A program made the position numbers and the translations under genes. A stretch of 64,000 nucleotides of DNA, taken from assembly GCF_030684315.1 (NCBI RefSeq), contig NC_081396.1, positions 1,550,001 to 1,614,000 on the forward strand. The letters run 5' to 3'. The DNA is from Stegostoma tigrinum (Eukaryota). The notes under the pieces were generated by a model. It was not told the origin of the DNA, made no database searches, and was given only the letters and a program-made list of their open reading frames with translations. Within the stretch, counting starts at the first letter, position 1; each line of letters begins with the position of its first letter. Below, piece by piece: positions 14,215-53,651 of the stretch.

Positions 14215-14464
14215 NNNNNNNNNNNNNNNNNNNNNNNNNNNNNNNNNNNNNNNNNNNNNNNNNNNNNNNNNNNNNNNNNNNNNNNNNNNNNNNNNNNNNN
14301 NNNNNNNNNNNNNNNNNNNNNNNNNNNNNNNNNNNNNNNNNNNNNNNNNNNNNNNNNNNNNNNNNNNNNNNNNNNNNNNNNNNNNNNNNNNNNNNNNNNN
14401 NNNNNNNNNNNNNNNNNNNNNNNNNNNNNNNNNNNNNNNNNNNNNNNNNNNNNNNNNNNNNNNN
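14215..14464. other. Assembly gap
   Basis: Run of N. Confidence 1.
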
Positions 14465-25258: not shown

Positions 25259-25452
25259 NNNNNNNNNNNNNNNNNNNNNNNNNNNNNNNNNNNNNNNNNN
25301 NNNNNNNNNNNNNNNNNNNNNNNNNNNNNNNNNNNNNNNNNNNNNNNNNNNNNNNNNNNNNNNNNNNNNNNNNNNNNNNNNNNNNNNNNNNNNNNNNNNN
25401 NNNNNNNNNNNNNNNNNNNNNNNNNNNNNNNNNNNNNNNNNNNNNNNNNNNN
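25259..25452. other. Assembly gap
   Basis: Run of N. Confidence 1.
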
Positions 25453-26148
25453 NTAGCTCCATTTGTTGAAAACCAAATCGCAAAGTTCAGCAGTTCCAAA
25501 ATATCTCTACTGCGATTTGTGTAGTTTACTGTTCTATATGAAATCACTCTTTATATCGGTTGCACAAATCATTCATGATCGGGAGCAGTGCATTTAATTG
25601 CGGCACGAATACTGCTGCAACCTTAGTTCCTGTTCATCAATGACCAAAATCGAGTTTGACACTATCGAGTGATCAGAATTCAAGATAATGTTCATTTCAA
25701 TTTTTATTCAGCAATCATCGAAGAGATGTTGCACTTGTATTGATTTTATTTTCGACCGATGTCGATGGATCAGTGAATATTACTGGACAAAATGGAGCTG
25801 GGAATTGTACTGAAATTTGGCATGAGTGGATCAATGTAATCTTACTGAGTAGAGGAGAATGTTCAAAGGTCCAAATGGCTGAGATCCAGCCGATACTTTG
25901 TCAGCATATGGAGAGATCTCTTACGTAATGGCCTGGAAAAGAAAAGGAGGTAAGAGACATTTGTCTGTCGCCTGGTTATTCTGTCAGAAATGGACCAGTT
26001 GAATCACTAGCCACAAATGAGAGATCATCAGCTCTGGCTTGAAGCAGTTCAGCTTCAATAACTTCGCTTTTTAATCTATTATGAGTTACGAGCACAAACA
26101 ATTCATTTTCAAATGCCATTGTTGAAACCCTCTATTCATTCTGAAAAC

Positions 26149-35039: not shown

Positions 35040-35660
35040 TTGCTGAACGAGTCAGGAAGGCAGGTATCCCACGACACTGATAGCTTTAACAAGCACAACC
35101 TGGAAACTGCTGGATCTGTGCCTCACAATACACGTCACCTTCAACGACCGTATATTCAAATAATTCAACAGCACAATGGGATCCCAAATATCAGGACTCA
35201 TAATAGACGCGGTAATACAATGGTTTGAATAAACAGCGCACCCCACAAGATGACCAGCAGACTCCTCAGTCCCCTAGGCATCAGTATAGCTTATAAACAA
35301 ACGACCATCTTGTGACAGCTACTGGCGATTATAAAATATCCTATACCCATAATCAATAAAAGTAATGTAAGTTACAAAATAACATGCAAGGACTGAGAGA
35401 AATATTACATCGACCAAACAGGAAGAAAATTGACAATAAGGATGCAGGAACACTAAGAAACGACCAAGAAACATAGATAATTCTCATTGTTGTCAGTTCA
35501 CACACACAAAGAAGGACAAAAATTCGACTGGTGAAACATATCCTTAATAACACAAACTAAGCAGAGGCATGCCAGAAATTCCTGGAGGCCTGGTATTCGG
35601 ACCGGAACTCCATAAACAAGCATATTGAAATGGACCCAATATATAAACAACTGAATGCAA
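35040..35660 (+). mobile_element. Decayed Penelope-like fragment (second family)
   Basis: Similar to 43690-44100 (atgaccagcagactcctc...ggcatc...gaaattcctggaggcctggtattc...ccggaactccataaacaagcatattg). Confidence 0.7.
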
Positions 35661-37619: not shown

Positions 37620-38765
37620 AATTACCCTCTGGGTAACATCATCAGTGCAGACTCTGATGAATTGACGTTGTGTTTTCCCGCCTGTTGTTTAAACTATGGA
37701 GTGCGTTGAGATGTTTACCTCACTTCCAACTTTCCTTTGTAGTGGAATATCAATGCAAACTCTCTGCGTTTGCTGATGACTTTTTGGTGGGGTAATATGC
37801 TTCTACGAATTCCCGTGCATGTCTCTGTTTGCTTGTCCCAGCTTCTTGGGCATGTCCCAAACAAATTAATGGTTCTACTTATCAATGTAGGTAGAGATGA
37901 GTGGGTCAGACGAAAACTTGTGTCAGAGGATACCTAGTACTTGAATGACACCAGGACACACTCATCATGCTTCCTTACATCAAGAACCCATCTGAACTGA
38001 CCATAAGACCACTGGGCACTGAAGTAGATCACAAAGCCACATCAATCCTACGACAACAGCTCATCTGAACCAACAATACATTGCCCACAATGGACAGGGC
38101 CAATGTAATATACGAGATACCCTGCAGAGGCTATGGCAAACAAAATATCAGACAAACTGAAGGGAAGTTAACAACAAGGCTACACAAACATCGTTTGGTT
38201 GTAAAAAGATACGACAAATACACACACAACTATATCCAGATGGATATGGAGAACTATCATTTCAACTGCCGCAACACTAAGATTCTGGGACAAGCAAAGC
38301 AAAGTCAAGTACAGGAATTGCTAGAAGCCTGGTGCTACAGCAAGAAATCCATCAACAAATGCATTGGTCTCAACTCCTTATACAATTTACTGCGAAGGAA
38401 AACTGGAACTGAGATAAGGCAGCTTCAGAGAAGCAGGAAAGCTGACTTTTCAGGCATGGACCCTTCTTCAGAACCGAAACGTCAGCTTTCCTGCTCATCT
38501 GATGCTGCCTGGCCAGCTGTATTTATTCAGTTCTACAACTTGTTATCTCAGACTCCAATATTGGCAGTTTCCTACTGTCTCAGAATGAGATAATACAGCT
38601 CACCATGCTCCAGAGTTTAAACAACAGACAGGAACAAGCAACCGTGCTTCATCAGAGGCTGCACTGAATATGTTACCCAGCTGGGTAACGAAACATCTGC
38701 GGAACAATGAACCAACTCCGTGTGCCAAACAACAACAACACACCCAACCCGATCTACAGATCTAC
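37620..38765 (+). mobile_element. Penelope-like fragment with nested fold-back terminus
   Basis: ORF 38081 NVIYEIPCRGYGKQNIRQTEGKLTTRLHKH...ELLEAW. Nested unit at about 38425-38582; degenerate hammerheads at about 37620-37645(-) and 38664-38698(+). Confidence 0.75.
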
Positions 38766-41010: not shown

Positions 41011-42478
41011 GGTTGGTTTCTGGGATGTGTATGTGTTGGCATTCCAGCTGCCGCATTGTGAAGTGAATTGGCATGCATGTGGATATCTGTGATTAACCAA
41101 TGCTTCAATAGTAATGTTCACGTTTAGTGGTGCATTTTCCTTTTTCAAGTAATTGGTCAGTGTTCTTTTGAAAATTCCGATTTGAGAAATACAATCACAG
41201 AAGAGGTTCCGAAATTTCTGCAGTGCCTGTGCACAGTGAATGGGCATTAACAAAGTGTCCCTCAATCAATGGAAAAAAATAGGAAGACACTACTTATGAA
41301 ACCAATTAATACAGAAACTGATTTAAACACAATGTTTTCTAGTTTAGAAAGGTGTTAAAAGTGTGGAATTGTGGGGAACTATCCACACCACTCCTGGGAT
41401 ATTTTAATCCTCTCCAGTTACTCTCTTCCTGGGAAAAAAAAATGAAAAGAAGACAGAGAAGCAAATGTAGGAATGTTAATAATACCAAGGTGTCTCTTCT
41501 CTTTCCTTGCAAATCCACAATCTGAAGACTCGGGATCATTAAATGTGCTCTTTTCAGACAGACAGAAAGTGACGCTCAGCATGTAGGACTGAAACACTAT
41601 ATTAGATGCAAAGCATATTCAGATCTGTGCTAGAAATTCAATTTGAATTCAAGGGAGAGTATGTTTTCTCTAATCTTTTGTTCAGATACAACATAGTTTA
41701 TTGTCATAACATGAGGGATCTATGGATCACTCTGACAAAGTGGGCTATCAGTGTCAGTTAATAAGTTCATTGGCACACAAGGGAAAACTCGCTGGTGTCG
41801 CTGATAGCCGTGCCACGATAGTTAGACTAATAGCATTCAAGGTAACTATTTTTCCAGGAAAAAAAACACAATTGAAAATCATGGGCTTCAGGATTACATA
41901 GCATGTTTGAGCTTCCCCTCCAAATCAATCACCATTCTGATTTTGAACAGTATGTATTTTTTCAATGACGATGCGTGAAAGTCATTGAAATCCTTTGCTA
42001 AAAGCACTGTGGGCGTCCCTACATCCCAGATGAGTCCAGCCATTCAATATGCAGATTGACTTCGCTTTCTCCAAGGCAATTTAGGATAGAAAAATATTCA
42101 GTTTCTATCAACTGTCACTAGAGGAAGAGGAGATACCCTTGCACAATAGAGATACCAATTGTGAGCCACTGGCAATGAATTAACAAATTTGCATTGAGCT
42201 GAAGAATGTTCATTTCCAACAAGCGCAACAGCAGAAACTGCACGTGACTGAGAATTTCACTGGTGGCTATGGCTTGTTAATCTTCCTCCGATGACTATCT
42301 AAAGAGATTAGCTTTCTGCAGGTATGAGTTACATTCGCCATTAATGTTAATATTTAAAAGCATGTCTGCATTATCGCTGATCAGTGAATTTATCACTCAT
42401 CACTCTGGAAATTCTAACATGCAGTTGAGGGGCATTAAAACATTCAATAAGCTTGACATTATTCAAGTGTTTCATTGT

Positions 42479-44243
42479 ATTGCGCCCAAAGGTGCTAGCG
42501 AGTTTTGAGAAGATTTGTAGCTCAGGTTGAGGTTCTGGATGTGAGTTTGCTCGCTGAACTGGAAGGTTAGTTTTCAGACGTTTCGTCACCATTCCAGGTA
42601 ACATCATCAGTGATCCTCCGACGAAGCGCTGGTGTTATGTCCCGCTTTCTATTTATCTGGTTAGGTTTCCTTGGGTTGGTGATGTCATTTCCTGCGTTGG
42701 TGATGCCATTTCCTGTTCTTTTTCACAGGGGATGTTAGATTGGCTCCAAATCAATGTACTTGTTGATAGAGTTCCGGTTGGAATGCCATGCTTCTAGGAA
42801 TTCTCGTGTGTGTCTCTGTTTGGCTTGTCCCAGGATGGATGTGTTGTCCCAATCAAAGTGGTGTCCTTCCTCATCTGTATGTAAGGATACGAGTGATAGT
42901 AGGTCATGTCGCTTAGTGGCTAGATGATGTTCATGTAACCTGGTGGTTAGCTTTCTGCGTATTTGTCACAGTTCTTGCAAGATATTTTGGAAATGACGTT
43001 CGTTTTGCTTGTTGTCTGTATAGGGTCTTTTAAGTTCATTAGCTGCTGTTTTAGTGTGTTGGTGGGTTTGTGGGCTCCGCTGATGCCAAGAGGTCCGAGT
43101 AGTCTGGCAGTCATGTATTGTTGATGGCCTTGAAGGTTTCCTCTAATTTGTTTTGTTTAGTGATGACAAAGGTGTCACCCACGTAGTGGACCCAAATTTT
43201 GGGTTGGATGATTGGTAGAGCTGTTTGTACAGTCTCTGCATTACGGCCTTTGCTAAGAACCCTGATATCGGAGATCCCATGGGTGTACCCTTGGAGACCA
43301 TCAAGAATACCCTTACTGGCATAACATTCACAAAAGAGGAGGAAAACAACAACAAACTGCCATTCCTAGATGTCATAATAGAGCGAACAGCCAATGGGGA
43401 ACTTCAAACCAGCGACTACAGGAAAACAACACATACGGACCAAATACTGAACTACAGGAGCAACCATCCCAACACCCACAAACGAAGCTGCATTAGAACA
43501 TTATTCCAACGGGCCACCACACACTGCAGCACAGAGGAACTACACAGAGCAGAAGAAAATCACCTCTACAGCGTATTCAAAAAGAATGCGTACACTATGA
43601 ACACAGTCCGCCGATTCCTCAGCAATGAACCCAAACAAACATCAAAACACGCTCAGAAACCATAACCACTCTCCCCTACATCAAAGACATTTCCGAAATG
43701 ACTGCTAGACTACTCGGACCTCTTGGCATCAGGGTAGCCCACAAACCCACCAACACACTAAAACAGCAGCTAATGAACTTAAAAGACCTTATACAGACAA
43801 CAAGCAAAATGAATGTCATTTCCAAAATAACTTGCAAGAACTGTGACAAACACTACATTGGACAAACTGGCAGAAAGCTAGCCACCAGGACACATGAACA
43901 TCAACTAGCCACAAAACAACATGACCCACTATCACTCGTATCCTTACATACAGATGAGGAAGGACACCACTTTGATTGGGACAACACATCCATCCTAGGA
44001 CAAGCCAAACAGAGGCACATACGAGAATTCCGAGAAGCATGGCATTCCAACCGGAACTCCATCAACAAACACATTGATTTGGAGCCAATCTACCATCCCT
44101 TGAGAAAAAGAACAGGAAATGGCATCACCAACGCAGGAAATGACATCACCAACCCAAGGAAACCTAACCAGATAAATAGAAAGCAGGACGCAACACCAGT
44201 GCTTCGTTGGAGACTCACTGATGGTGTTACCTAGAATGGTGAC
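42479..44243 (+). mobile_element. Young Penelope-like element with inverted 5' duplicate; resumes at 49537-49590 after the Tx1
   Basis: RT C-terminus (NNKLPFLDV...YRKTTHTDQILNY) and GIY-YIG (TCKNCDKHYIGQTGRKLATRTHEH). About 42575-43115 is the reverse complement of about 43695-44243. The 13-bp direct repeat agtgtttcattgt at 42466-42478 and 49591-49603 brackets the composite. Confidence 0.92.
42577..42610 (-). ncRNA. Minimal type I hammerhead ribozyme core, intact
   Basis: The minus strand reads CTGATGA-T-GTTACC-TGGAAT-GGTGAC-GAAA-CGTC, with a 6-bp stem II and GUC triplet. Confidence 0.85.
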
Positions 44244-44451
44244 TGTTGTCGGGGAACAAACCTTCCAGCTCATTGAACCAGCTTACGTCCGGAACAAAAT
44301 AAAGACCCACTCTTTTGTGGACCAAGAGGAGGAGAGCGCCGTGTTGGAGGTGGAAGGAAGACGTCGGGTTGGCTGTGCACCCATGCAACCGGTGGTTCTT
44401 AATGCTGGCTTAGGCCTCACGCTGGCTAAGGGGAGCAGCCAACCTGCAACG

Positions 44452-45870
44452 ATGGCTGCGGCAAGTTCTCGTGCCCCAGGTCAGGGGATCCGGAACACCA
44501 TCTGCGTTTCCGTGAAGAAGTTGGATGAAGGTACACCTGTGGACCGCACCTTCTTTGTGAAGAGGGTCTTGTTGGACTATTGTGGGTTCGCTGCTGCAGA
44601 CATTTACTGCCTGCAGGATTTCTCCGGAGGAGGTTTTTACTATGTAACCTTCAGGAGTGCCAAGCTTTGCGAGCGCTTCCTGGAGGTTTTCAAGGAGAAA
44701 GGAGGTGAGGGCTCCCTCTCTGTATTGACCGCTCTCCCGCTGTTTGTGATGCCAGTGCAGAGGAGCCGTATGGTGACTGTACACATGTACAACCCACATG
44801 TGCCAGCAGTTGATGTCCTGACCTTTTTTGGAAGGTATGTGAAGGTGGAAGGGGAGCTAACTGACATCATGGGCCTCATTGGCATCTGGACAGGTAAGAG
44901 GCAAGTCAAGCTGACGCTGAGGATGGGCGCGGATGGGAACATTGTACACCCACCTTCCAGCTTCGCGATCGGCGGGAGCAAGGGCTACCTGACCTACGCA
45001 GGGCAACCTAAAGTCTGCCATGCCTGTTGTAGGTCAGGTCACGTGGCTGCCAACTGCAAAGCCACAATCTGCAGGAACTGCAGGGCGGAGGGATACCTTG
45101 CAAAGGATTGCCCACAAGAAAAAAGCTGCAACCTTTGTGGGGAAGCGGGCCACCTCTAGAGGGCATGCCCGCGGCGGGGGACCACCTACGCCCAGGTCGC
45201 TGGCAGGGGCAATGCGGGGGCCAGCCCCCCGGAGGAGAGGAAGGCACCAGGGCCCTGCAAGGACCCCACTAATGTGAAGGAGGGCCAGGTCGTGCAGGAG
45301 GGACGAGCCCCGCAGGATGGGCCCGAGGCCAGCAAAGTGCCCCTCCAGGCTCCGCTCCCGCCCGACAACCCAGAGTCAATTGAGACGGCGACAGGCACCC
45401 CAGGGGACTGGACGATGGTCTGGAAAGAGAGGAGGAAGGCGCGTCAGCAGGCCCAGGAACCGCAACCATCAGGCGGGAAAAGGCAGCTACAGGGGGGCTA
45501 TAAGATTTCCTCAATCGAGGGAGATTTGGAGGGCCCCGCCGAAAGCAGATGCTGAAGATCTCAAGGGAGAAGGAAAGCAGCACCCCGCTTCCCGGTGATG
45601 GGAGGCGTCCTGAGGCTCCCTCCGACACCCAGTCACGTGCTGCTGGGGCCCTGGAGGGCCCCCCCGGAACTTCCAGGCGGGAAGGAGGAAACTGCGTGTC
45701 CCCAGCCTGACCCAGAGTCAGACTCTCCTGCCTCTGTACCCCCGACGGGGGGATGCTACCCGGAAAGCAGCACGGATGGTTTCCGGAGCCCGGAGAGCAT
45801 CCAGCTGTTAGCCCGGCAATGGGCATGAAGGGACAGATGGAGGGGCTGGACCTTGGGCTTGCGGAGGGTA
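44452..45870 (+). pseudogene. Tx1 ORF1 (gag-like, three CCHC zinc knuckles), disrupted
   Basis: MAAASSRAPGQGIRNTI...YAGQPKVCHACCRSGHVAANC...CRNCRAEGYLAKDC...CNLCGEAGHL*. Stop at 45157; 3' end approximate. Confidence 0.85.
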
Positions 45871-45888
45871 CTGCGGCCACTGCCCACA

Positions 45889-48800
45889 ATGGGGGTACGA
45901 GTTGCGAGCATTAATGTGCGCAGTGTCAAGTACACCACAAGATGTGTGTCCACATTGACCTACCTGACCACCGTCAAGGCGGACCTCCTGTTTCTGCAGG
46001 AGTACAGGATACCGCATCTCAGCAGGTACGGGCAATGGTCCAGCACCTGGACCTGTGGGCCTTCAATCTGGTCGGGGGGTAACGACTGTCACTCCTCGGG
46101 CCTGGCTATTCTGCTGCGCGGGTGCAACTTCACCATCTGTCAAGTTCAGGAGGTGGTGGTGTGGCGCCTCCTAGTGGCTGACGTCACTTACAGCAACGCT
46201 CCCCTGAGGCTGATCAACGTGTATGCCCCAGTACGGAATGAGCGGTTTTTTGTCCTGCAGCGGCTTCCACCCCTGCCGATCATCCTAGGCGGAAACTTCA
46301 ACTGCATCATCGATGCAGATGGAAGATCCGGCGTGGGGACAGTGGGTGGGGGGAGTCAACTGGACGTCACGTCCAGATTCCTGATGGGCACGATGAAGGA
46401 CGCCAAGCTGCTCGACATCTTCAGCAACCCTGCAGTCGGAGCGCAGCGGACGTACGCCTGGTCGCGGCCAGACGGGTCTATTTGCTCAAGGATAGACTTC
46501 CTGTTTGTGTCACGGGCGTTCTCGGTCAGGTACACCGGCTTTCTTCTCTGACCACTGCCTCCTGCTGGCCGACTGTCACTTACATGGCGACCAGCCGGCC
46601 AGCAAGGGGACGTGGAAGCTCAACACGATTCTGTTGACCCCAGAGAACGTTGAGGAGCTTAAGAGGGAGTACGCCAGTTGGAGAACCGTGAAACACCTCT
46701 TTGAGTCTCCCGGCGACTGGTGGGAGACGGTGAAGGAGAACATCAAGAGATTCATTGTCCTCAAGTGTGTTCAGAAGGCGAGAGAGGCGGGGAAAGCTGT
46801 CGCGACTCCAGAAAAGGATGCAGAACCTGCTCCTCCTGCAGTTGATAGGGGTCGATGTCACGGAGGACCTCCGTGAGGTGAGGGGACAGCAAGCCTCGCT
46901 CTTCGCCGCGGAGGCCTCCAGGATAATCTTCCGGTCCAGGGTCAGCTCCGTGGAGTAGGACGAGACGTGCTCTCATTTCTTCTTTCAGAAGGTGCACAAA
47001 CAGGGCTCTGTGCTTAGCTGGCTGAAGGAGGACGACAGCTCGGTGACGTCGTCTCAGCCTGACATTTTGAGGATCAGCAAATCCCTCTATGTCGGACTGT
47101 ACGACACGAAGCCCACGGACAGCACGGCCTCCGAGTCGTTCCTGTCGTCTATCACGGAGGTCTTCCACGATGGCACGAGGGAGTGGCTGGACCGACCGAT
47201 ATCCCTGGATGAGCTGACCAGAGCCCTCAAGTCCTTGGAGAGGAATAGGACTCGCGGGAGCGACGGCTTACCGGTCGAGCTCTATTCCACTCCCTGGGAC
47301 CTGGTAGGCCAGGACCTGCTGGAGGTGTACGCTAGTGCACTTCAGGCAGGGGAAATGTGCAAGTGCATGAGGAAGGGCATCATCACCCTCATTTACAAGA
47401 TGAATGGGGAGAGGGAAGAAATTAAGAATTGGCGTCCGATTTCTCTATTGAACGTGGACTACAAAATCCAGGCCAAGGACATAGTCAACCGAGTCAGGTC
47501 TGTCCTGGAGTCGGTGATTCACCCTGACCAAACCTGTGCTGTGCTGTGCAGGAAGATCGCTGAGAGCCTCGCGCTCATCAGGGATACGATCGCCTACGTG
47601 CAGGGCAGCCGGGTGAACACCTGCCTCGTCAGCCTGGACCAGGAGAAGGCCTTCGACAGGGTCTCTGATGCTTACATGAGGGACGTCCTCTCCAAATTGG
47701 GGTTCGGGGACGGCATCCGCAATTGGATCCAGCTGCTCTACACCAACGTCGTTAGCACAGTCTCGATCAACGGGTGGGAATTGGACAGTTTTCCCGTCAG
47801 ATCTGGAGTCAGGCAGGGCTGCCCGCTCTCTCCTGCCTTGTTCGTGTGCTGTGTGGAGCCCTCGCCGCATCCATCAGGAAGGACGTGAGTCTGAAGGGCG
47901 TGAGTAACCCAGGCAGTGGAGGCCTTCAGGTCAAGGCCTCCCTGTACATGGACAACATCGCCGTCTTCTGCACTGATCGTCGATCGGTGAGAAGTCTGTT
48001 GGACATCTGCGGCTAGTTTGAACTGGCCGTGGGTGCCAATGTCAATAGGGGCAAGAGCGAGGTCATGTTCTTTGGGAACTGGCGCGACCGCTCCTTCATC
48101 CCCTTCACCGTCAGGACAGACTACCTGAAGGTGCTGGGTGTTTGGATCGGTGGAGCTGGGGCGTGCACTCCGACTTGGGAGGAGTGTATCACCAAACTGA
48201 AGCAGAAGCTGGGCAGGTGGACGCTCCGGTCCCCCTCCATTGCGGGTAATAACCTGGTTGTCAGGTGCGAGGGGCTTTTGGTACTGTTGTATGTGGCGCA
48301 GACCTGGTCTATTCCCTGGACCTGCGCCTCTGCAGTCACCCAGGCCATCTTCCACTACATTTAGGGTTCGAGGATGGACCGTATCCGCAGGGACAACATG
48401 TACAAAGACCCGGAAAATTGGGGAAAGGGCATACTGAATAACACCCTCGCCCTGACGACTACCTTTGTGTGCGGCTGCATCAAGATGTGCGCATTTCCTT
48501 AGTATGCAAACAGCAAGTGTCACTACTTACTGAGATTCTAACTGTCCCCGGTGTTGCGAAGGATGGGCCTGGCCTTGTTGCCGCGGAATGCTCTGAATGG
48601 TTGGACCGTCCTGTACCACCTGTCCTTCGCGGAGGAATTTTTGAAAGGAAACACCTTTGACCCCAAGTATCCTTGAGACCCTTCGGGAAAAGGAGAGGGA
48701 GGATCCCATCGTGTGGTTCCCCATGCAGACAGCCAAAGTCATTTGGCAGAATGCCTCATCGCCAGAACTTTCAAACAAGCACAAGGGCATTGCTTGGCTG

Positions 48801-49266
48801 GTGGTGAGAGGGGCTCTGCCCTTGAGATCCTTTATGCATGCCCGGAATTCCTGCACCACCGCACGTTGCCCTCGAGGAGGCTGTTGGCAGGGCGAGGGGG
48901 GCGGGGAACAAGACTGTCGATCACCTCCTTCTGCAGTGTCCTGTTGCGCAGGAGGTCTGGAGGGGAATGCAGTGGTATTTGTCGAAGTTCGTCCCGAACA
49001 GCTCCGTGACGCGGGATTCCCTGTTCTACGGGCTGGTTCCCGGGACGCACACCGAGACCAATATCAACAGCGCCTGGAGGACCATCAATACGGTGAAAGA
49101 CGCTCTTTGGTCTGCCCGCAACTTGCTGGTCTGCCAACTGAAAGAACTGATCCCGACCGAGTGTTGCAGGCTGGCGCACTCCAAGGTCCAGGACTACGTG
49201 CTGAGGGGTGCTCTAAAGCTTGGGGCAGCCACCGCCAAGGCGCGCTGGGGAAAGACCACCGTATGA
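45889..49266 (+). pseudogene. Tx1 ORF2 (APE endonuclease, RT, C-terminal CCHC), frameshifted
   Basis: VASINVRS...LFLQE...INVYAP...GGNFNC...SRIDF...SDH; NWRPISLLNVDYKI, SLDQEKAFDRV, GVRQGCPLSP, LYMDNI; CPRGGC...VDHLLLQC. Confidence 0.93.
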
Positions 49267-49956
49267 AACCACTCGTCCAGAATAGGAAAAAGGGCCCTAT
49301 CTGGTAACTGGGCCCAGCTGGCGCCTTCCCCAACTGGTCAGGTGGCCAACAGGGACTGTGTGGGTTGACGACTGCCGGGGTATTTTCTTTGCTTTGTTTT
49401 TTACTTTTTTTTTCCTTTTGTTGGTGTACGTCGTCCTTGGGTAACCCACAGTGGCTTGCATGACTGGGTAGGTGTATAAATATGTTTTATTTTTTGTACA
49501 TCTTATGAATACAGTATATTTTTTCAAATAAAAAAAGGTGACGAACCGTCTGAAAACTAATCTTCCAGCTCAGCGAGCAAATTCATATCCAGTGTTTCAT
49601 TGTTAGAATCGTGTGCCAGACCATTGCTTCACGAACCGAGTACTGCAGCGCCTTGTTTCAATGCAGGTTTACTGGACTGAAACCAGTTTTTGAGTTTTGC
49701 AAACCACCTCATCAAAGGAGCAGTGAAACACTTCGGGCCATCTGAATGGTATCAATATTTCATTCGTGTTTTTTAAATAATGACAGTAATACTTACAGTA
49801 TTAAATTATTTCAAAATATATACATAATGAAAACAAAAAATGTTTTGAGTTCAATTGAGAAGAATAGGTTCTCAGCTCAAATTCTGGAACTATTCCGGAT
49901 CGACCCTTGTTCTCACTGTGTGCCTGCCGCACTGTCAGGCTCACTGTCTCTCTAAC

Positions 49957-49995
49957 AGTTTTTGAACGTAGTCAGGCCAGGTCTCAGCCTCCGTG
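49957..49995 (-). promoter_or_regulatory. Recombination signal sequence, 23-bp spacer, non-consensus
   Basis: Minus strand CACGGAG (49995-49989), 23 nt, TCAAAAACT (49965-49957). Confidence 0.85.
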
Positions 49996-50511
49996 GGTCT
50001 CAAAGCGCAGTAATACACTACGGAGTCTGTTAGTTCTGTCTTCAATATATTCAGCTTGATCGTTCGGTTAATGTGATCTAATTCTGTGGAAAACCTGTCG
50101 CCTGGAAATCTCTCCGTGTTCCCACTATATTGGCTTCTGTATAAGAGAAACTCCATGGAGCCGCTTAAACGTTGATAGTACCAGAAAAGGTAAGGCGTGT
50201 TGCTTGTTGTAGCGTAATTACAAAACAGCTGGGCATTATCTTTCTCATTCACTAGGATTGAAGCTGGCGCCTGAGTGACAGAATCTCCGCGACAAAGCAC
50301 TGTAAAAAACAAGGAGTAATCGGAATTTTTTTTTAAAAAAATCAATTTTGTAAATTGCCCACATTTGACCCTTCAAATTGAACCAAAGCATGAGAATTAA
50401 TAAGAAGGATCAGTTTCTGAAAAAAAAACTTCAGCAATCCAAAAAATAATTCAAGGTAGTAAAACAGCCGCAACCTGAAAAGCAAATCAGGAAAGCTAAA
50501 CAAAAAGCCAT
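49996..50511 (-). CDS. TRAV: TCR alpha/delta variable gene segment (TRAV-like), open frame; exons 50511-50475 and 50299-49996
   Basis: Leader MAFCLAFLICFS with donor GTTGCG (leader less certain), acceptor ttttttacag. Exon LCRGDSVTQAPASILVNEKDNAQLFCNYATTSNTPYLFWYYQRLSGSMEFLLYR...FPGDRFSTELDHINRTIKLNILKTELTDSVVYYCALRP. Confidence 0.93.
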
Positions 50512-53503: not shown

Positions 53504-53651
53504 NNNNNNNNNNNNNNNNNNNNNNNNNNNNNNNNNNNNNNNNNNNNNNNNNNNNNNNNNNNNNNNNNNNNNNNNNNNNNNNNNNNNNNNNNNNNNNNNN
53601 NNNNNNNNNNNNNNNNNNNNNNNNNNNNNNNNNNNNNNNNNNNNNNNNNNN
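53504..53651. other. Assembly gap
   Basis: Run of N. Confidence 1.

What the first reader, a model, noticed from the sequence alone, without database searches (positions are those of the whole stretch)
44200..49603. Tx1 LINE inserted inside a Penelope hammerhead, and starting with a diverged copy of the post-cleavage Penelope sequence
Seen: the Penelope terminus reads ctgatggtgttacctagaatGGTGAC | 5.3-kb Tx1 with A-tail | GGTGACgaaccgtctgaaaactaatcttccagctc. The duplicated 6-mer is the 3' strand of hammerhead stem II, directly before the GAAA box (compare the intact copy at 42577-42610). The first ~50 nt of the insert (tgttgtc-ggggaacaaaccttccagctcattgaaccagcttacgtccggaac, 44244-44295) are a more diverged version of the Penelope sequence following the GUC cleavage triplet (gtc-tgaaaactaaccttccagttcagcgagcaaactcacatccagaac). 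Established: many Tx1-clade families are target-sequence specific, and R2 elements use a ribozyme to make their 5' end. Inference: this may be a Tx1 family that targets Penelope termini and borrows the Penelope hammerhead or promoter to generate its RNA 5' end, with the homologous leader guiding 5' joining.
Basis: partly seen in the sequence, partly recalled or inferred. Interest (0 to 1): 0.8.

Follow-up and report, generated by a model that had tools for sequence, protein, structure and literature searches.

The report
LINE inside Penelope's hammerhead motif
A dead copy of a very abundant shark LINE sits at one exact bond inside the small hammerhead-ribozyme motif of another retroelement (Penelope) and begins with an old copy of the Penelope sequence that follows that bond, but in this copy the junction does not rebuild a working ribozyme.

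Summary
A 5,293-bp L1/Tx1-type LINE (44244-49536, AATAAA plus A7) splits a Penelope-like element between GGTGAC (3' strand of hammerhead helix II) and the GAAA box, and GGTGAC is duplicated (44238-44243, 49537-49542). From GTC onward (44248-44295) the insert matches the Penelope tail at 35 of 48 positions; 0 of 2000 shuffles reached that score.

- **Copy number:** contigs of four public runs show a very high-copy family. At least one other copy carries the leader joined to the 5' UTR.
- **Site specificity:** I think it likely. The leader's homology starts at the bond, and notes from at least 8 other windows of this genome report the same bond. I could not take a census of flanks.
- **Ribozyme borrowing:** not supported for this copy. 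The junction reads CUGAUGG ... GGUGAC-UGUU-GUC, so the GAAA box is gone, and GUC is retained, so the template was probably not cut there.
- **Leader as guide for 5' joining:** the homology is to the downstream side of the target, the wrong side for that role.
- **New here:** the two Penelope arms are one inverted-pair insertion flanked by a 13-bp duplication. The leader homology ends about where the short-form Penelope ends.

The scan found this system before, on other DNA of the same genome. I found no paper describing it.

The parts
42466..42478 (+). Left copy of the 13-bp direct repeat AGTGTTTCATTGT. Read as the target-site duplication of the whole Penelope inverted pair.
   Evidence: The 13-mer occurs exactly twice in the window, at the two outer edges of the pair. 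0 of 100 shuffles had any match.
42479..43290 (-). Reverse Penelope-like arm, 5'-truncated, with a 3' tail about 55 nt longer than that of the forward arm. The inner end (~43290) is approximate.
   Evidence: Self-blast: 43698-44243 matches 43114-42585 at 90.7% over 546 columns. Alignment A1. A minus-strand ORF at 43143-43394 has a weak RVT_1 match (E 0.018).
42577..42610 (-). Intact minimal hammerhead motif: CUGAUGA, an unpaired U, helix II GUUACC/GGUGAC, GAAA, C, GUC. This target is empty; the bond lies between 42585 and 42584.
   Evidence: No Rfam hit.
43291..44243 (+). Forward Penelope-like arm up to the insertion bond. Its reading frame (43698-44234) carries a GIY-YIG-like stretch, and its stop codon TAG (44232-44234) lies in the hammerhead loop. 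The inner start is approximate.
   Evidence: 68 of 92 residues are identical to P0153 across that protein's weak GIY-YIG match.
44218..44243 (+). 5' part of the split hammerhead motif: CTGATGG (44218-44224; A9 of the core is G here), GTTACC (44226-44231), loop TAGAAT, GGTGAC (44238-44243, the upstream copy of the 6-bp duplication).
44244..49536 (+). L1/Tx1-type LINE, 5,293 bp, full length or nearly so, with broken frames.
   Evidence: Within the window it hits only itself. Pfam domains. The nearest solved structure is human L1 ORF2p, E 8e-35. Contigs that join 44237-44241 to 49537-49543 show the uninterrupted form: 7 in X1 and 6 in X2 among the joints listed.
44244..44295 (+). Leader: 4 nt with no homology (TGTT), then GTC...GGAAC, a diverged copy of the Penelope sequence from the GUC triplet to about the short-form Penelope 3' end.
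   Evidence: 35 of 48 identical, 0 of 2000 shuffles as good. A1. Another copy carries 44259 onward joined to the 5' UTR (X2 record 9).
44452..45156 (+). ORF1, N-terminal 235 codons: two ZCCHC3-type RNA-binding domains and a CCHC knuckle. It is ended by a stop that is private to this copy (45159 is G here and T in nearly all contigs).
   Evidence: table 3.
45853..49266 (+). ORF2 in pieces: apurinic-type endonuclease (45853-46551), reverse transcriptase (46992-47888), C-terminal piece with a faint zf-RVT match (48838-49266). The pieces lie in several different frames.
49527..49536 (+). AATAAA signal overlapping a 7-A tail.
49537..49592 (+). Downstream copy of GGTGAC (49537-49542), then the rest of the forward arm's hammerhead and tail (GAACCGTC...CATATCCAG). 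GAAAC has decayed to GAACC.
   Evidence: 45 of 50 identical to the reverse arm's tail.
49591..49603 (+). Right copy of the 13-bp direct repeat AGTGTTTCATTGT.

Best explanation
This is a dead, essentially full-length copy of a very abundant L1/Tx1-type LINE family.

**Integration (inferred).** The family's endonuclease nicks one fixed place in the DNA that encodes the minimal hammerhead of a Penelope-like element. The LINE enters by target-primed reverse transcription between GGTGAC (3' strand of helix II) and the GAAA box, with a 6-bp staggered cut that duplicates GGTGAC.

**The leader (shown).** The family carries at its 5' end an old copy of the Penelope sequence that lies 3' of that bond, from the GUC triplet to about where short-form Penelope copies end.

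**Origin of the leader (inferred).** It is a relic of the founding event. Either a LINE abutted the 3' end of a Penelope copy and was transcribed from within it, or a cDNA jumped onto Penelope RNA. The leader has since drifted to 73% identity.

**This copy (shown and inferred).** The junction cannot be a hammerhead, because GAAA is replaced by UGUU and CUGAUGA reads CUGAUGG (shown). The template RNA still held GUC, so it was not cut at the ribozyme site (inferred). The 5' junction was probably closed by a few filler bases (TGTT) or by microhomology (inferred).

**What the leader might still do (open).** It may mimic the target so that new copies land head to tail, or it may sit just behind the Penelope promoter.

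**Context (shown and inferred).** The LINE lies in one arm of a Penelope inverted pair that entered as one unit with a 13-bp duplication (shown). It most likely arrived after that event (inferred).
For: - **Precise anatomy.** The 6-bp duplication, the A-tail and contigs of the uninterrupted form are all seen (table 5).
- **Leader homology.** 35 of 48 identical, 0 of 2000 shuffles as good, and it begins within 4 nt of the bond.
- **The leader is older than the target copy.** 73% identity, against 45 of 50 between the two Penelope tails and 498 of 554 columns between the arms.
- **The leader is shared by another copy.** X2 record 9 spans 44259-44417 with 17 other letters.
- **Other contigs reach the first bases of the insert.** Contigs cover 44245 without a gap, at depth 5128 of 9609 in X1 and 2167 of 5148 in X2. 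Single-copy flank contigs have depth 24 and 20. The tool warns that depth is not copy number.
- **The family is very abundant and also present under a second species label.** 54,486, 33,892, 739 and 371 contigs were laid from X1, X2, X7 and X5.
- **The core is not rebuilt**.
- **Protein domains fit an L1-superfamily LINE**.
- **Precedent.** Tx1-clade families are known to aim at other transposons (PMC4494074, passages read).
- **Unverified leads.** Notes s1-882106, -881828, -881864, -881825, -882129, -882328, -881488 and -881824 report the same bond in other windows of this genome.
Against: - Only one copy of the LINE is in this window, and I could not tabulate the flanks of other copies. Site specificity is therefore inferred, not counted.
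- The 'A put in behind 44245' seen in 11 X1 and 8 X2 contigs is ambiguous. It could be a family variant of the junction, but it is also exactly what an uninterrupted Penelope tail (GAAAC against TG-TT) would show if it were laid across the leader.
- The window's other hammerhead target (42570-42593) is empty.
- The whole composite lies inside a single Penelope insertion (13-bp duplication), so the LINE could have come in as a passenger rather than by its own insertion here.
- Tx1-clade membership, as opposed to the L1 clade, was not resolved.
- No RNA data were available.
Confidence: 0.6

Rival explanations
1. **Ribozyme hijack.** Each insertion rebuilds a hammerhead from the Penelope 5' half and the LINE's leader. 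A read-through transcript from the Penelope promoter then cuts itself at GUC, giving the LINE RNA its 5' end, as R2 does with its own HDV-like ribozyme.
For: - The bond lies inside the motif.
- The leader keeps GUC and the block AACCUUCCAG (10 of 10 identical), which can pair with GGAG upstream as distal helix I.
- When it was first captured, the leader would have completed the motif.
- Earlier notes on other copies report 5' ends at or just after the cut site (s1-882129, s1-881828; unverified).
- LINEs with 5' ribozymes are known (PMC3774820, PMC3185411 and PMC8501958; I saw only the start of each abstract in the search listing).
Against: - In this copy the invariant GAAA is UGUU and A9 is G.
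- The copy retains GUC 5' of the cut site, which is 1 in 64 by chance if those bases were filler.
- Minimal Penelope hammerheads cleave poorly and only as dimers in vitro (PMC4209133, passages).
- In Anolis no RNA-seq reads begin or end at the cut site (PMC11167929, passages).
- No RNA runs are on record for this stretch.
Confidence: 0.12
2. **Passenger or block duplication.** One ancestral LINE insertion in a Penelope tail was then multiplied together with its Penelope flanks, by Penelope retrotransposition or by segmental duplication. The recurrent junction would then not show targeting.
For: - The composite at 42479-49590 is bracketed by a single 13-bp duplication, so both arms came in one Penelope event.
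- Note s1-881864 read another window this way (unverified).
Against: - The reverse arm of the same event has an empty target.
- The LINE has its own 6-bp duplication and A-tail.
- A 6.4-kb cDNA for one arm against about 0.8 kb for the other is an awkward fit.
- The LINE family is about as abundant as the Penelope itself (with the tool's caveat on depth).
Confidence: 0.15
3. **One-off nested insertion.** A randomly inserting LINE landed here, and its cDNA switched template onto a diverged Penelope RNA, giving a private leader.
For: - Template jumps at LINE 5' ends are known (general knowledge).
- Only one copy is in the window.
Against: - Another, 11% different copy carries the leader joined to the 5' UTR (X2 record 9).
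- Contigs reach 44245 at many times single-copy depth.
- Earlier notes report the same anatomy in at least 8 other windows.
Confidence: 0.04
4. **Long target-site duplication.** The leader and the downstream tail are the two copies of a roughly 55-bp duplication made at this insertion.
For: The two stretches are direct repeats that flank the insert, in register with the bond.
Against: - The leader is 73% identical to the Penelope tail, while the two arms' tails share 45 of 50 positions. Two copies made in one event should be equally old.
- TGTT replaces GAAAC.
- The leader occurs in another copy.
Confidence: 0.03

Closest known systems
Target-specific Tx1-clade LINEs: Tx1L in the piggyBac element Tx1D of Xenopus; Tx1-Mar in Mariner-N4_AMi and Tx1-8_Crp/Tx1-4_AMi in LTR retrotransposons of crocodilians; Keno in U2 genes (PMC4494074, passages read)
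   Same: - An APE-type LINE with a CCHC ORF1 that lands at a fixed place in another repeated sequence, here another transposable element.
- Some Tx1 families and their SINEs carry target-derived 5' sequence, and transcription from the flanking target has been proposed for them.
   Different: - The target here is a Penelope-like retroelement, at a bond inside its hammerhead motif. 'Penelope' occurs 0 times in that paper, and four searches found no paper with this target.
- The 5' leader copies the sequence downstream of the bond.
- Clade membership was not tested by phylogeny here.
R2 and other LINEs with 5' self-cleaving ribozymes: R2 HDV-like (PMC3774820), L1Tc (PMC3185411), twister variants in Schistosoma (PMC8501958). 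I saw only the start of each abstract in the search listing.
   Same: A site-specific LINE that may depend on co-transcription with its target and needs a way to define its RNA 5' end.
   Different: - Those ribozymes are encoded whole within the LINE's own 5' end.
- Here half of the motif would come from the target.
- In this copy the catalytic GAAA is missing, so no ribozyme is present at the junction.
Minimal hammerheads of Penelope-like elements (PMC4209133, passages read) and the optional Penelope 'tail' (PMC11167929, passages read)
   Same: - The intact arm has CUGAUGA, an unpaired base before a long helix II, GAAA, a 1-bp palindromic ACGU helix III and a short helix I.
- It sits in the terminal part of an RT plus GIY-YIG element.
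- Inverted pairs, and tails of two lengths, are both as described for these elements.
   Different: - Here the motif serves as a landing site for another element. That role is not described in either paper's passages that I read.
- Rfam models do not detect this motif.

Membership tests
L1 superfamily LINE (L1/Tx1 type) | ORF2 with an apurinic-type endonuclease followed by a reverse transcriptase | tested here: met
   Exo_endo_phos E 2e-9 and RVT_1 E 3e-21, in the right order. The nearest solved structure is human L1 ORF2p at E 8e-35, against R2 at 2e-10.
L1 superfamily LINE (L1/Tx1 type) | ORF1 with RNA-binding domains and a CCHC knuckle; a 3' A-tail; a short target duplication | tested here: met
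   RBD_ZCCHC3_1st, RBD_ZCCHC3_2nd and zf-CCHC. AATAAA plus A7 and a 6-bp GGTGAC duplication.
Tx1 clade specifically | The RT domain groups with Tx1 references in a phylogeny | tested here: inconclusive
No labelled Tx1 reference could be obtained. Names among the hits are 'hypothetical', 'uncharacterized' or missing.
Tx1 clade specifically | Family-wide insertion at one target sequence | tested here: inconclusive
   - One precise insertion in the window.
- The leader is shared by another copy, and contigs reach the first bases of the insert.
- Earlier notes agree but are unverified.
Penelope-like element (the host) | A reverse transcriptase followed by a GIY-YIG endonuclease | tested here: inconclusive
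   - The window's own pieces give no Pfam hit at E up to 1, apart from a weak RVT_1 match (E 0.018) on the reverse arm.
- The relative P0153 has RVT_1 (29.3 bits, cut-off 29.6) and GIY-YIG (17.8 bits, cut-off 22.6), both just under cut-off.
- The window aligns with 68 of 92 residues identical across that GIY-YIG stretch.
Penelope-like element (the host) | A minimal hammerhead in the terminal repeat; inverted or tandem partial copies; an optional tail | tested here: met
   Motif at 42577-42610. Inverted pair with a 13-bp duplication. Tails of two lengths.
Hammerhead ribozyme, at the LINE's 5' junction | Conserved core: CUGAUGA, GAAA, and a cleavage triplet after helix III | tested here: not met
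   The junction reads CUGAUGG ... GGUGAC UGUU GUC. GAAA is absent and A9 is G; helix II and GUC are kept. There is no Rfam hit either, though the intact copy gives none too.
Ribozyme-processed LINE (R2-like) | The RNA 5' end is made by self-cleavage of a co-transcript | not testable with these tools
   No run holding this stretch is on record as RNA, and only contigs were laid, so no molecule ends could be seen. The sequence of this copy argues against it.

The most novel reading that the evidence does not exclude
In its active master copies, the family uses a split hammerhead. Every insertion joins the target's CUGAUGA-helix II half to a leader-borne GAAA-GUC-helix I half. A transcript started at the Penelope promoter then frees the LINE RNA by self-cleavage, and the leader at the same time restores a Penelope-like 3' end and a fresh target. 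The copy in this window would be a decayed or imprecisely joined product of that cycle.
Probability: 0.12. Interest if true: 0.8.

Novelty: new variant of a known kind. Interest (0 to 1): 0.5.

Why it matters
- **Known background.** Target-specific LINEs are models for how an endonuclease and an RNA together choose a site. Tx1-type elements are known to aim at DNA transposons, LTR elements, small RNA genes and microsatellites.
- **What is new.** A very high-copy family aimed at a bond inside another retroelement's ribozyme motif adds a new kind of target. It also shows one retroelement parasitising another on a genomic scale.
- **Open questions it raises.** The target-derived leader poses a testable question about how such elements get their 5' ends and promoters, and whether they spare or regenerate their target.
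- **Annotation.** These composites can be misread as chimeric elements or as Penelope variants.

Tried and rejected
- **Other copies in the window.** Self-blast of the LINE gave only the self-hit.
- **Collection scans with leader and junction motifs.** They returned only chance matches in microbial DNA: L001, an AT-rich contig that I read at 1500-2300; L002, Pseudomonas, and L003, an Actinomycetota MAG; and L004, a viral contig.
- **Naming the clade.** Hit names, the ESM Atlas, a full HMMER search and cluster names gave no Tx1 label.
- **Rfam.** No hammerhead at either threshold.
- **A gene-conversion tract upstream of the bond.** The last 50 columns have 6 mismatches, within the range of the other 50-column bins. 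Rejected.
- **An excess of A-to-G changes in the leader.** 5 of 13 differences, too few to argue for editing. Dropped.
- **An in-frame run from an ATG in the CUGAUGG box into ORF1.** 77 codons without a stop; 468 of 20,000 shuffles do as well. Treated as chance.
- **The 'A put in behind 44245'.** I first read it as a family variant of the junction. I withdrew that because an uninterrupted Penelope tail laid over the leader would give the same signal.
- **Supplementary files.** I did not ask for them. Supplementary figures S3-S6 of PMC4494074, which list Tx1 targets, could bear on the claim that this target is new.

Full report
**What is in the sequence.** On the plus strand a Penelope-like arm ends ...CTGATGGTGTTACCTAGAAT-GGTGAC (GGTGAC = 44238-44243). 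A 5,293-bp insert follows (44244-49536), ending in AATAAA and seven A. Then comes GGTGAC again (49537-49542), followed by GAACCGTCTGAAAACTAATCTTCCAGCTCAGCGAGCAAATTCATATCCAG. An inverted, uninterrupted copy of the same Penelope end lies at 42479-43114. It reads CTGATGATGTTACCTGGAATGGTGACGAAACGTC at 42577-42610 on the minus strand, and it is the only match in the window to CTGATGA-N19-GAAACGTC with up to 2 mismatches. The 24-mer around the bond occurs twice in the window, once empty (42570-42593) and once behind the insert's A-tail (49534-49557, 2 mismatches). Contigs from public runs of the same species include the uninterrupted form, joining 44237-44241 to 49537-49543: 7 contigs in X1 and 6 in X2 among the joints listed. 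The insertion is therefore precise, with a 6-bp duplication.

**What the insert is.**
- ORF1 (44452-45156) has two ZCCHC3-type RNA-binding domains and a CCHC knuckle.
- The ORF2 pieces carry Exo_endo_phos (45853-46548) and RVT_1 (46992-47885).
- The RT piece is closest, among solved structures, to human L1 ORF2p (E 8e-35, against 2e-10 for R2).
- The ORF2 pieces lie in several different frames. The stop that ends the first ORF1 piece is private to this copy: 45159 is G here and T in nearly all contigs (table 3). The copy is dead.
- The label 'Tx1' is not confirmed. Hit names are uninformative and I had no labelled reference for a tree. I call it L1/Tx1-type.

**What the host is.**
- The forward arm's reading frame (43698-44234) has relatives in sharks (16 proteins at E up to 0.001).
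- One of them, P0153, has RVT_1 and GIY-YIG matches just below Pfam's cut-offs. The window aligns with 68 of 92 residues identical across that GIY-YIG stretch.
- The terminal motif fits the published minimal hammerhead of Penelope-like elements: CUGAUGA, an unpaired base, a 6-bp helix II, GAAA, a palindromic ACGU in place of helix III, and a short helix I (PMC4209133, passages).
- Rfam does not detect it at either threshold, so 'hammerhead' rests on the motif.
- The Penelope reading frame ends inside or just after the motif. The forward arm has TAG at 44232-44234. The reverse arm reads on to a TAA after GUC (read).

**The leader.**
- From GTC to GAAC (44248-44295) the insert aligns without gaps to the Penelope tail that follows GAAAC, with 35 of 48 positions identical.
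- None of 2000 dinucleotide shuffles reached the score (22, against a mean of 7.7 and a maximum of 14). The best of 1036 windows of the LINE body scored 12.
- The first four bases, TGTT, bear no likeness to the GAAAC they replace.
- The leader is much more diverged from Penelope (73% identical) than the two tails are from each other (45 of 50) or the two arms are (498 of 554 columns). It was therefore not copied from this target at this insertion.
- Another copy of the family carries it. X2 record 9, a 180-nt contig, lies on 44259-44417 with 17 other letters and 3 gaps, so it joins the leader to the 5' UTR.
- Contigs also cover 44245 without a gap, at depth 5128 of 9609 in X1 and 2167 of 5148 in X2. 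The single-copy flank contigs have depth 24 and 20. The tool warns that depth is not copy number.

**A caution on one signal.** An extra A behind 44245 is seen in 11 X1 and 8 X2 contigs. It cannot be taken as a family variant of the junction, because an uninterrupted Penelope tail (GAAAC against TG-TT) laid over the leader would show exactly that insertion.

**Is the family site-specific?**
- I could not count flanks.
- The argument I can make is this. The leader is family-borne. In this copy its homology to Penelope starts within 4 nt of the very bond at which the element sits in a Penelope. Under random insertion that coincidence is very unlikely.
- The scan's earlier notes report the same bond in at least 8 other windows of this genome, several with two or three copies. 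These are unverified leads, but they point the same way.
- The family is very abundant (54,486 and 33,892 contigs laid from X1 and X2). It is also present under a second species label (739 contigs from X7, 63 of them at least 99% alike).
- I put site specificity at about three in four.

**Does the junction rebuild a ribozyme?** Not in this copy. The junction RNA would read CUGAUGG-U-GUUACC-UAGAAU-GGUGAC-UGUU-GUC-GGGGAAC... Helix II and GUC are present, and the block AACCUUCCAG, which can pair with GGAG upstream, is unchanged. The invariant GAAA is gone, and A9 of CUGAUGA is G. The copy also retains GUC, which lies 5' of the cut site. If those bases were filler, GUC would be there 1 time in 64, so the template RNA was most likely not cut at the hammerhead site. 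The literature adds reasons for doubt. Minimal Penelope hammerheads cleave weakly and only as dimers (PMC4209133, passages). In Anolis no RNA-seq reads begin or end at the cut site, and uncut RNA is the main substrate (PMC11167929, passages). Whether younger or master copies carry GAAA is open.

**Does the leader guide 5' joining?** The geometry is against it. After the staggered cut, the free top-strand 3' end is ...AATGGTGAC. To prime second-strand synthesis it must pair with the 3' end of the cDNA, which is the complement of the RNA's 5' end. That needs homology to the upstream side of the bond. The leader is homologous to the downstream side. The TGTT filler also suggests an untidy join here. 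This is inference from the standard model of target-primed reverse transcription.

**Two new points of anatomy.**
- The 13-mer AGTGTTTCATTGT occurs only at 42466-42478 and 49591-49603, the two outer edges of the Penelope pair. Both arms, their 3' ends pointing outward, therefore came in as one Penelope insertion. The reverse arm has a tail about 55 nt longer than the forward arm. That fits the optional tail and the two reverse-transcription start sites described for these elements (PMC11167929, passages).
- The leader's homology stops at ...CCGGAAC, which corresponds to ...CCAGAAC in Penelope. That is 3-5 nt beyond where the forward arm itself ends. The leader is thus the stretch from the GUC triplet to about the short-form Penelope 3' end. 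This suggests the founder LINE abutted the 3' end of a Penelope copy, or that its cDNA continued onto a Penelope template, and that the chimeric 5' end was then inherited.

**Did the LINE insert here, or ride in with the Penelope?** The single 13-bp duplication leaves a passenger scenario open: a LINE-bearing Penelope RNA could have been the template of the forward arm. The empty target in the reverse arm of the same event, and the 6.4-kb against 0.8-kb arm lengths, make insertion after the Penelope event more likely. I could not date the two events.

**Comparison with what is known.** Tx1-clade LINEs that aim at other transposons are established: Tx1L in Tx1D, Tx1-Mar in a Mariner, and two families in LTR elements. 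So are target-derived 5' heads and proposed transcription from the flanking target (PMC4494074, passages). LINEs with 5' ribozymes are also established, but there the ribozyme is wholly the LINE's own (PMC3774820, PMC3185411, PMC8501958; I saw only the start of each abstract in the search listing). I found no paper naming a Penelope-like element or a hammerhead motif as a LINE target:
- Tx1 + Penelope + hammerhead gave 1 paper, a pipeline paper seen in the listing only.
- Tx1 + Penelope + 'inserted into' + shark gave 0.
- L1-Tx1 + Penelope + shark gave 0.
- Tx1 + Penelope + 'target specificity' gave 4, none on this by title or abstract.
- A 2026 preprint on animal retrozymes and Penelope-like elements has no occurrence of 'Tx1' or 'shark'.
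Repbase Reports and the supplementary figures of PMC4494074 were not searchable.

**Verdict.** The reading is partly right. This is most likely a member of a site-specific LINE family with a new kind of target and a target-derived leader, which makes it a new variant of a known kind. The ribozyme-hijack idea is not borne out by this copy and remains a minority possibility for the family.

Noticed in passing
window 42466-42478 and 49591-49603: A 13-bp direct repeat, AGTGTTTCATTGT, brackets the whole inverted Penelope pair with the LINE inside it. It occurs nowhere else in the window, so the pair is one insertion event with a target-site duplication.
   Followed up: yes
window 49941-50345 (-): A 134-codon ORF with an immunoglobulin V-set domain (E 6e-13) that ends ...YYCALRP. 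It looks like a T-cell-receptor or immunoglobulin V gene segment just downstream of the composite.
   Followed up: partly
window 44221-45159 (+): An ATG inside the CUGAUGG box opens a frame that runs 77 codons without a stop, through the leader and 5' UTR, into ORF1 in frame. 468 of 20,000 shuffles do as well, so it is probably chance.
   Followed up: partly
window 44232-44234, and 42577-42610 (-): The Penelope reading frame ends inside the hammerhead (TAG in the loop of the forward arm) or just after GUC (the reverse arm reads ...DDVTWNGDETSEN stop). The ribozyme motif therefore overlaps the C-terminal coding sequence.
   Followed up: no
window 35259-35643, 37797-37841, 38282-38366: More diverged fragments (67-89% identical) of the same or a related Penelope-like element. 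None reaches the hammerhead end.
   Followed up: no
window 44000-49800 (table 1): Where contigs differ from this copy, the commonest changes are window A against contig G (88 places in X1) and window T against contig C (89 places). That is as expected if this copy has lost CpG sites by deamination.
   Followed up: no
window 14215-14464, 25259-25453, 53504-53651: Three runs of N (593 letters in all). They were left untouched.
   Followed up: no
277 letters beyond the window's end (note s1-881728): An earlier first-reader note reports tandem 213-bp units, each with a minimal dimer-type hammerhead, close to this window. They may be Penelope-derived retrozyme-like repeats. I did not examine them.
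   Followed up: no
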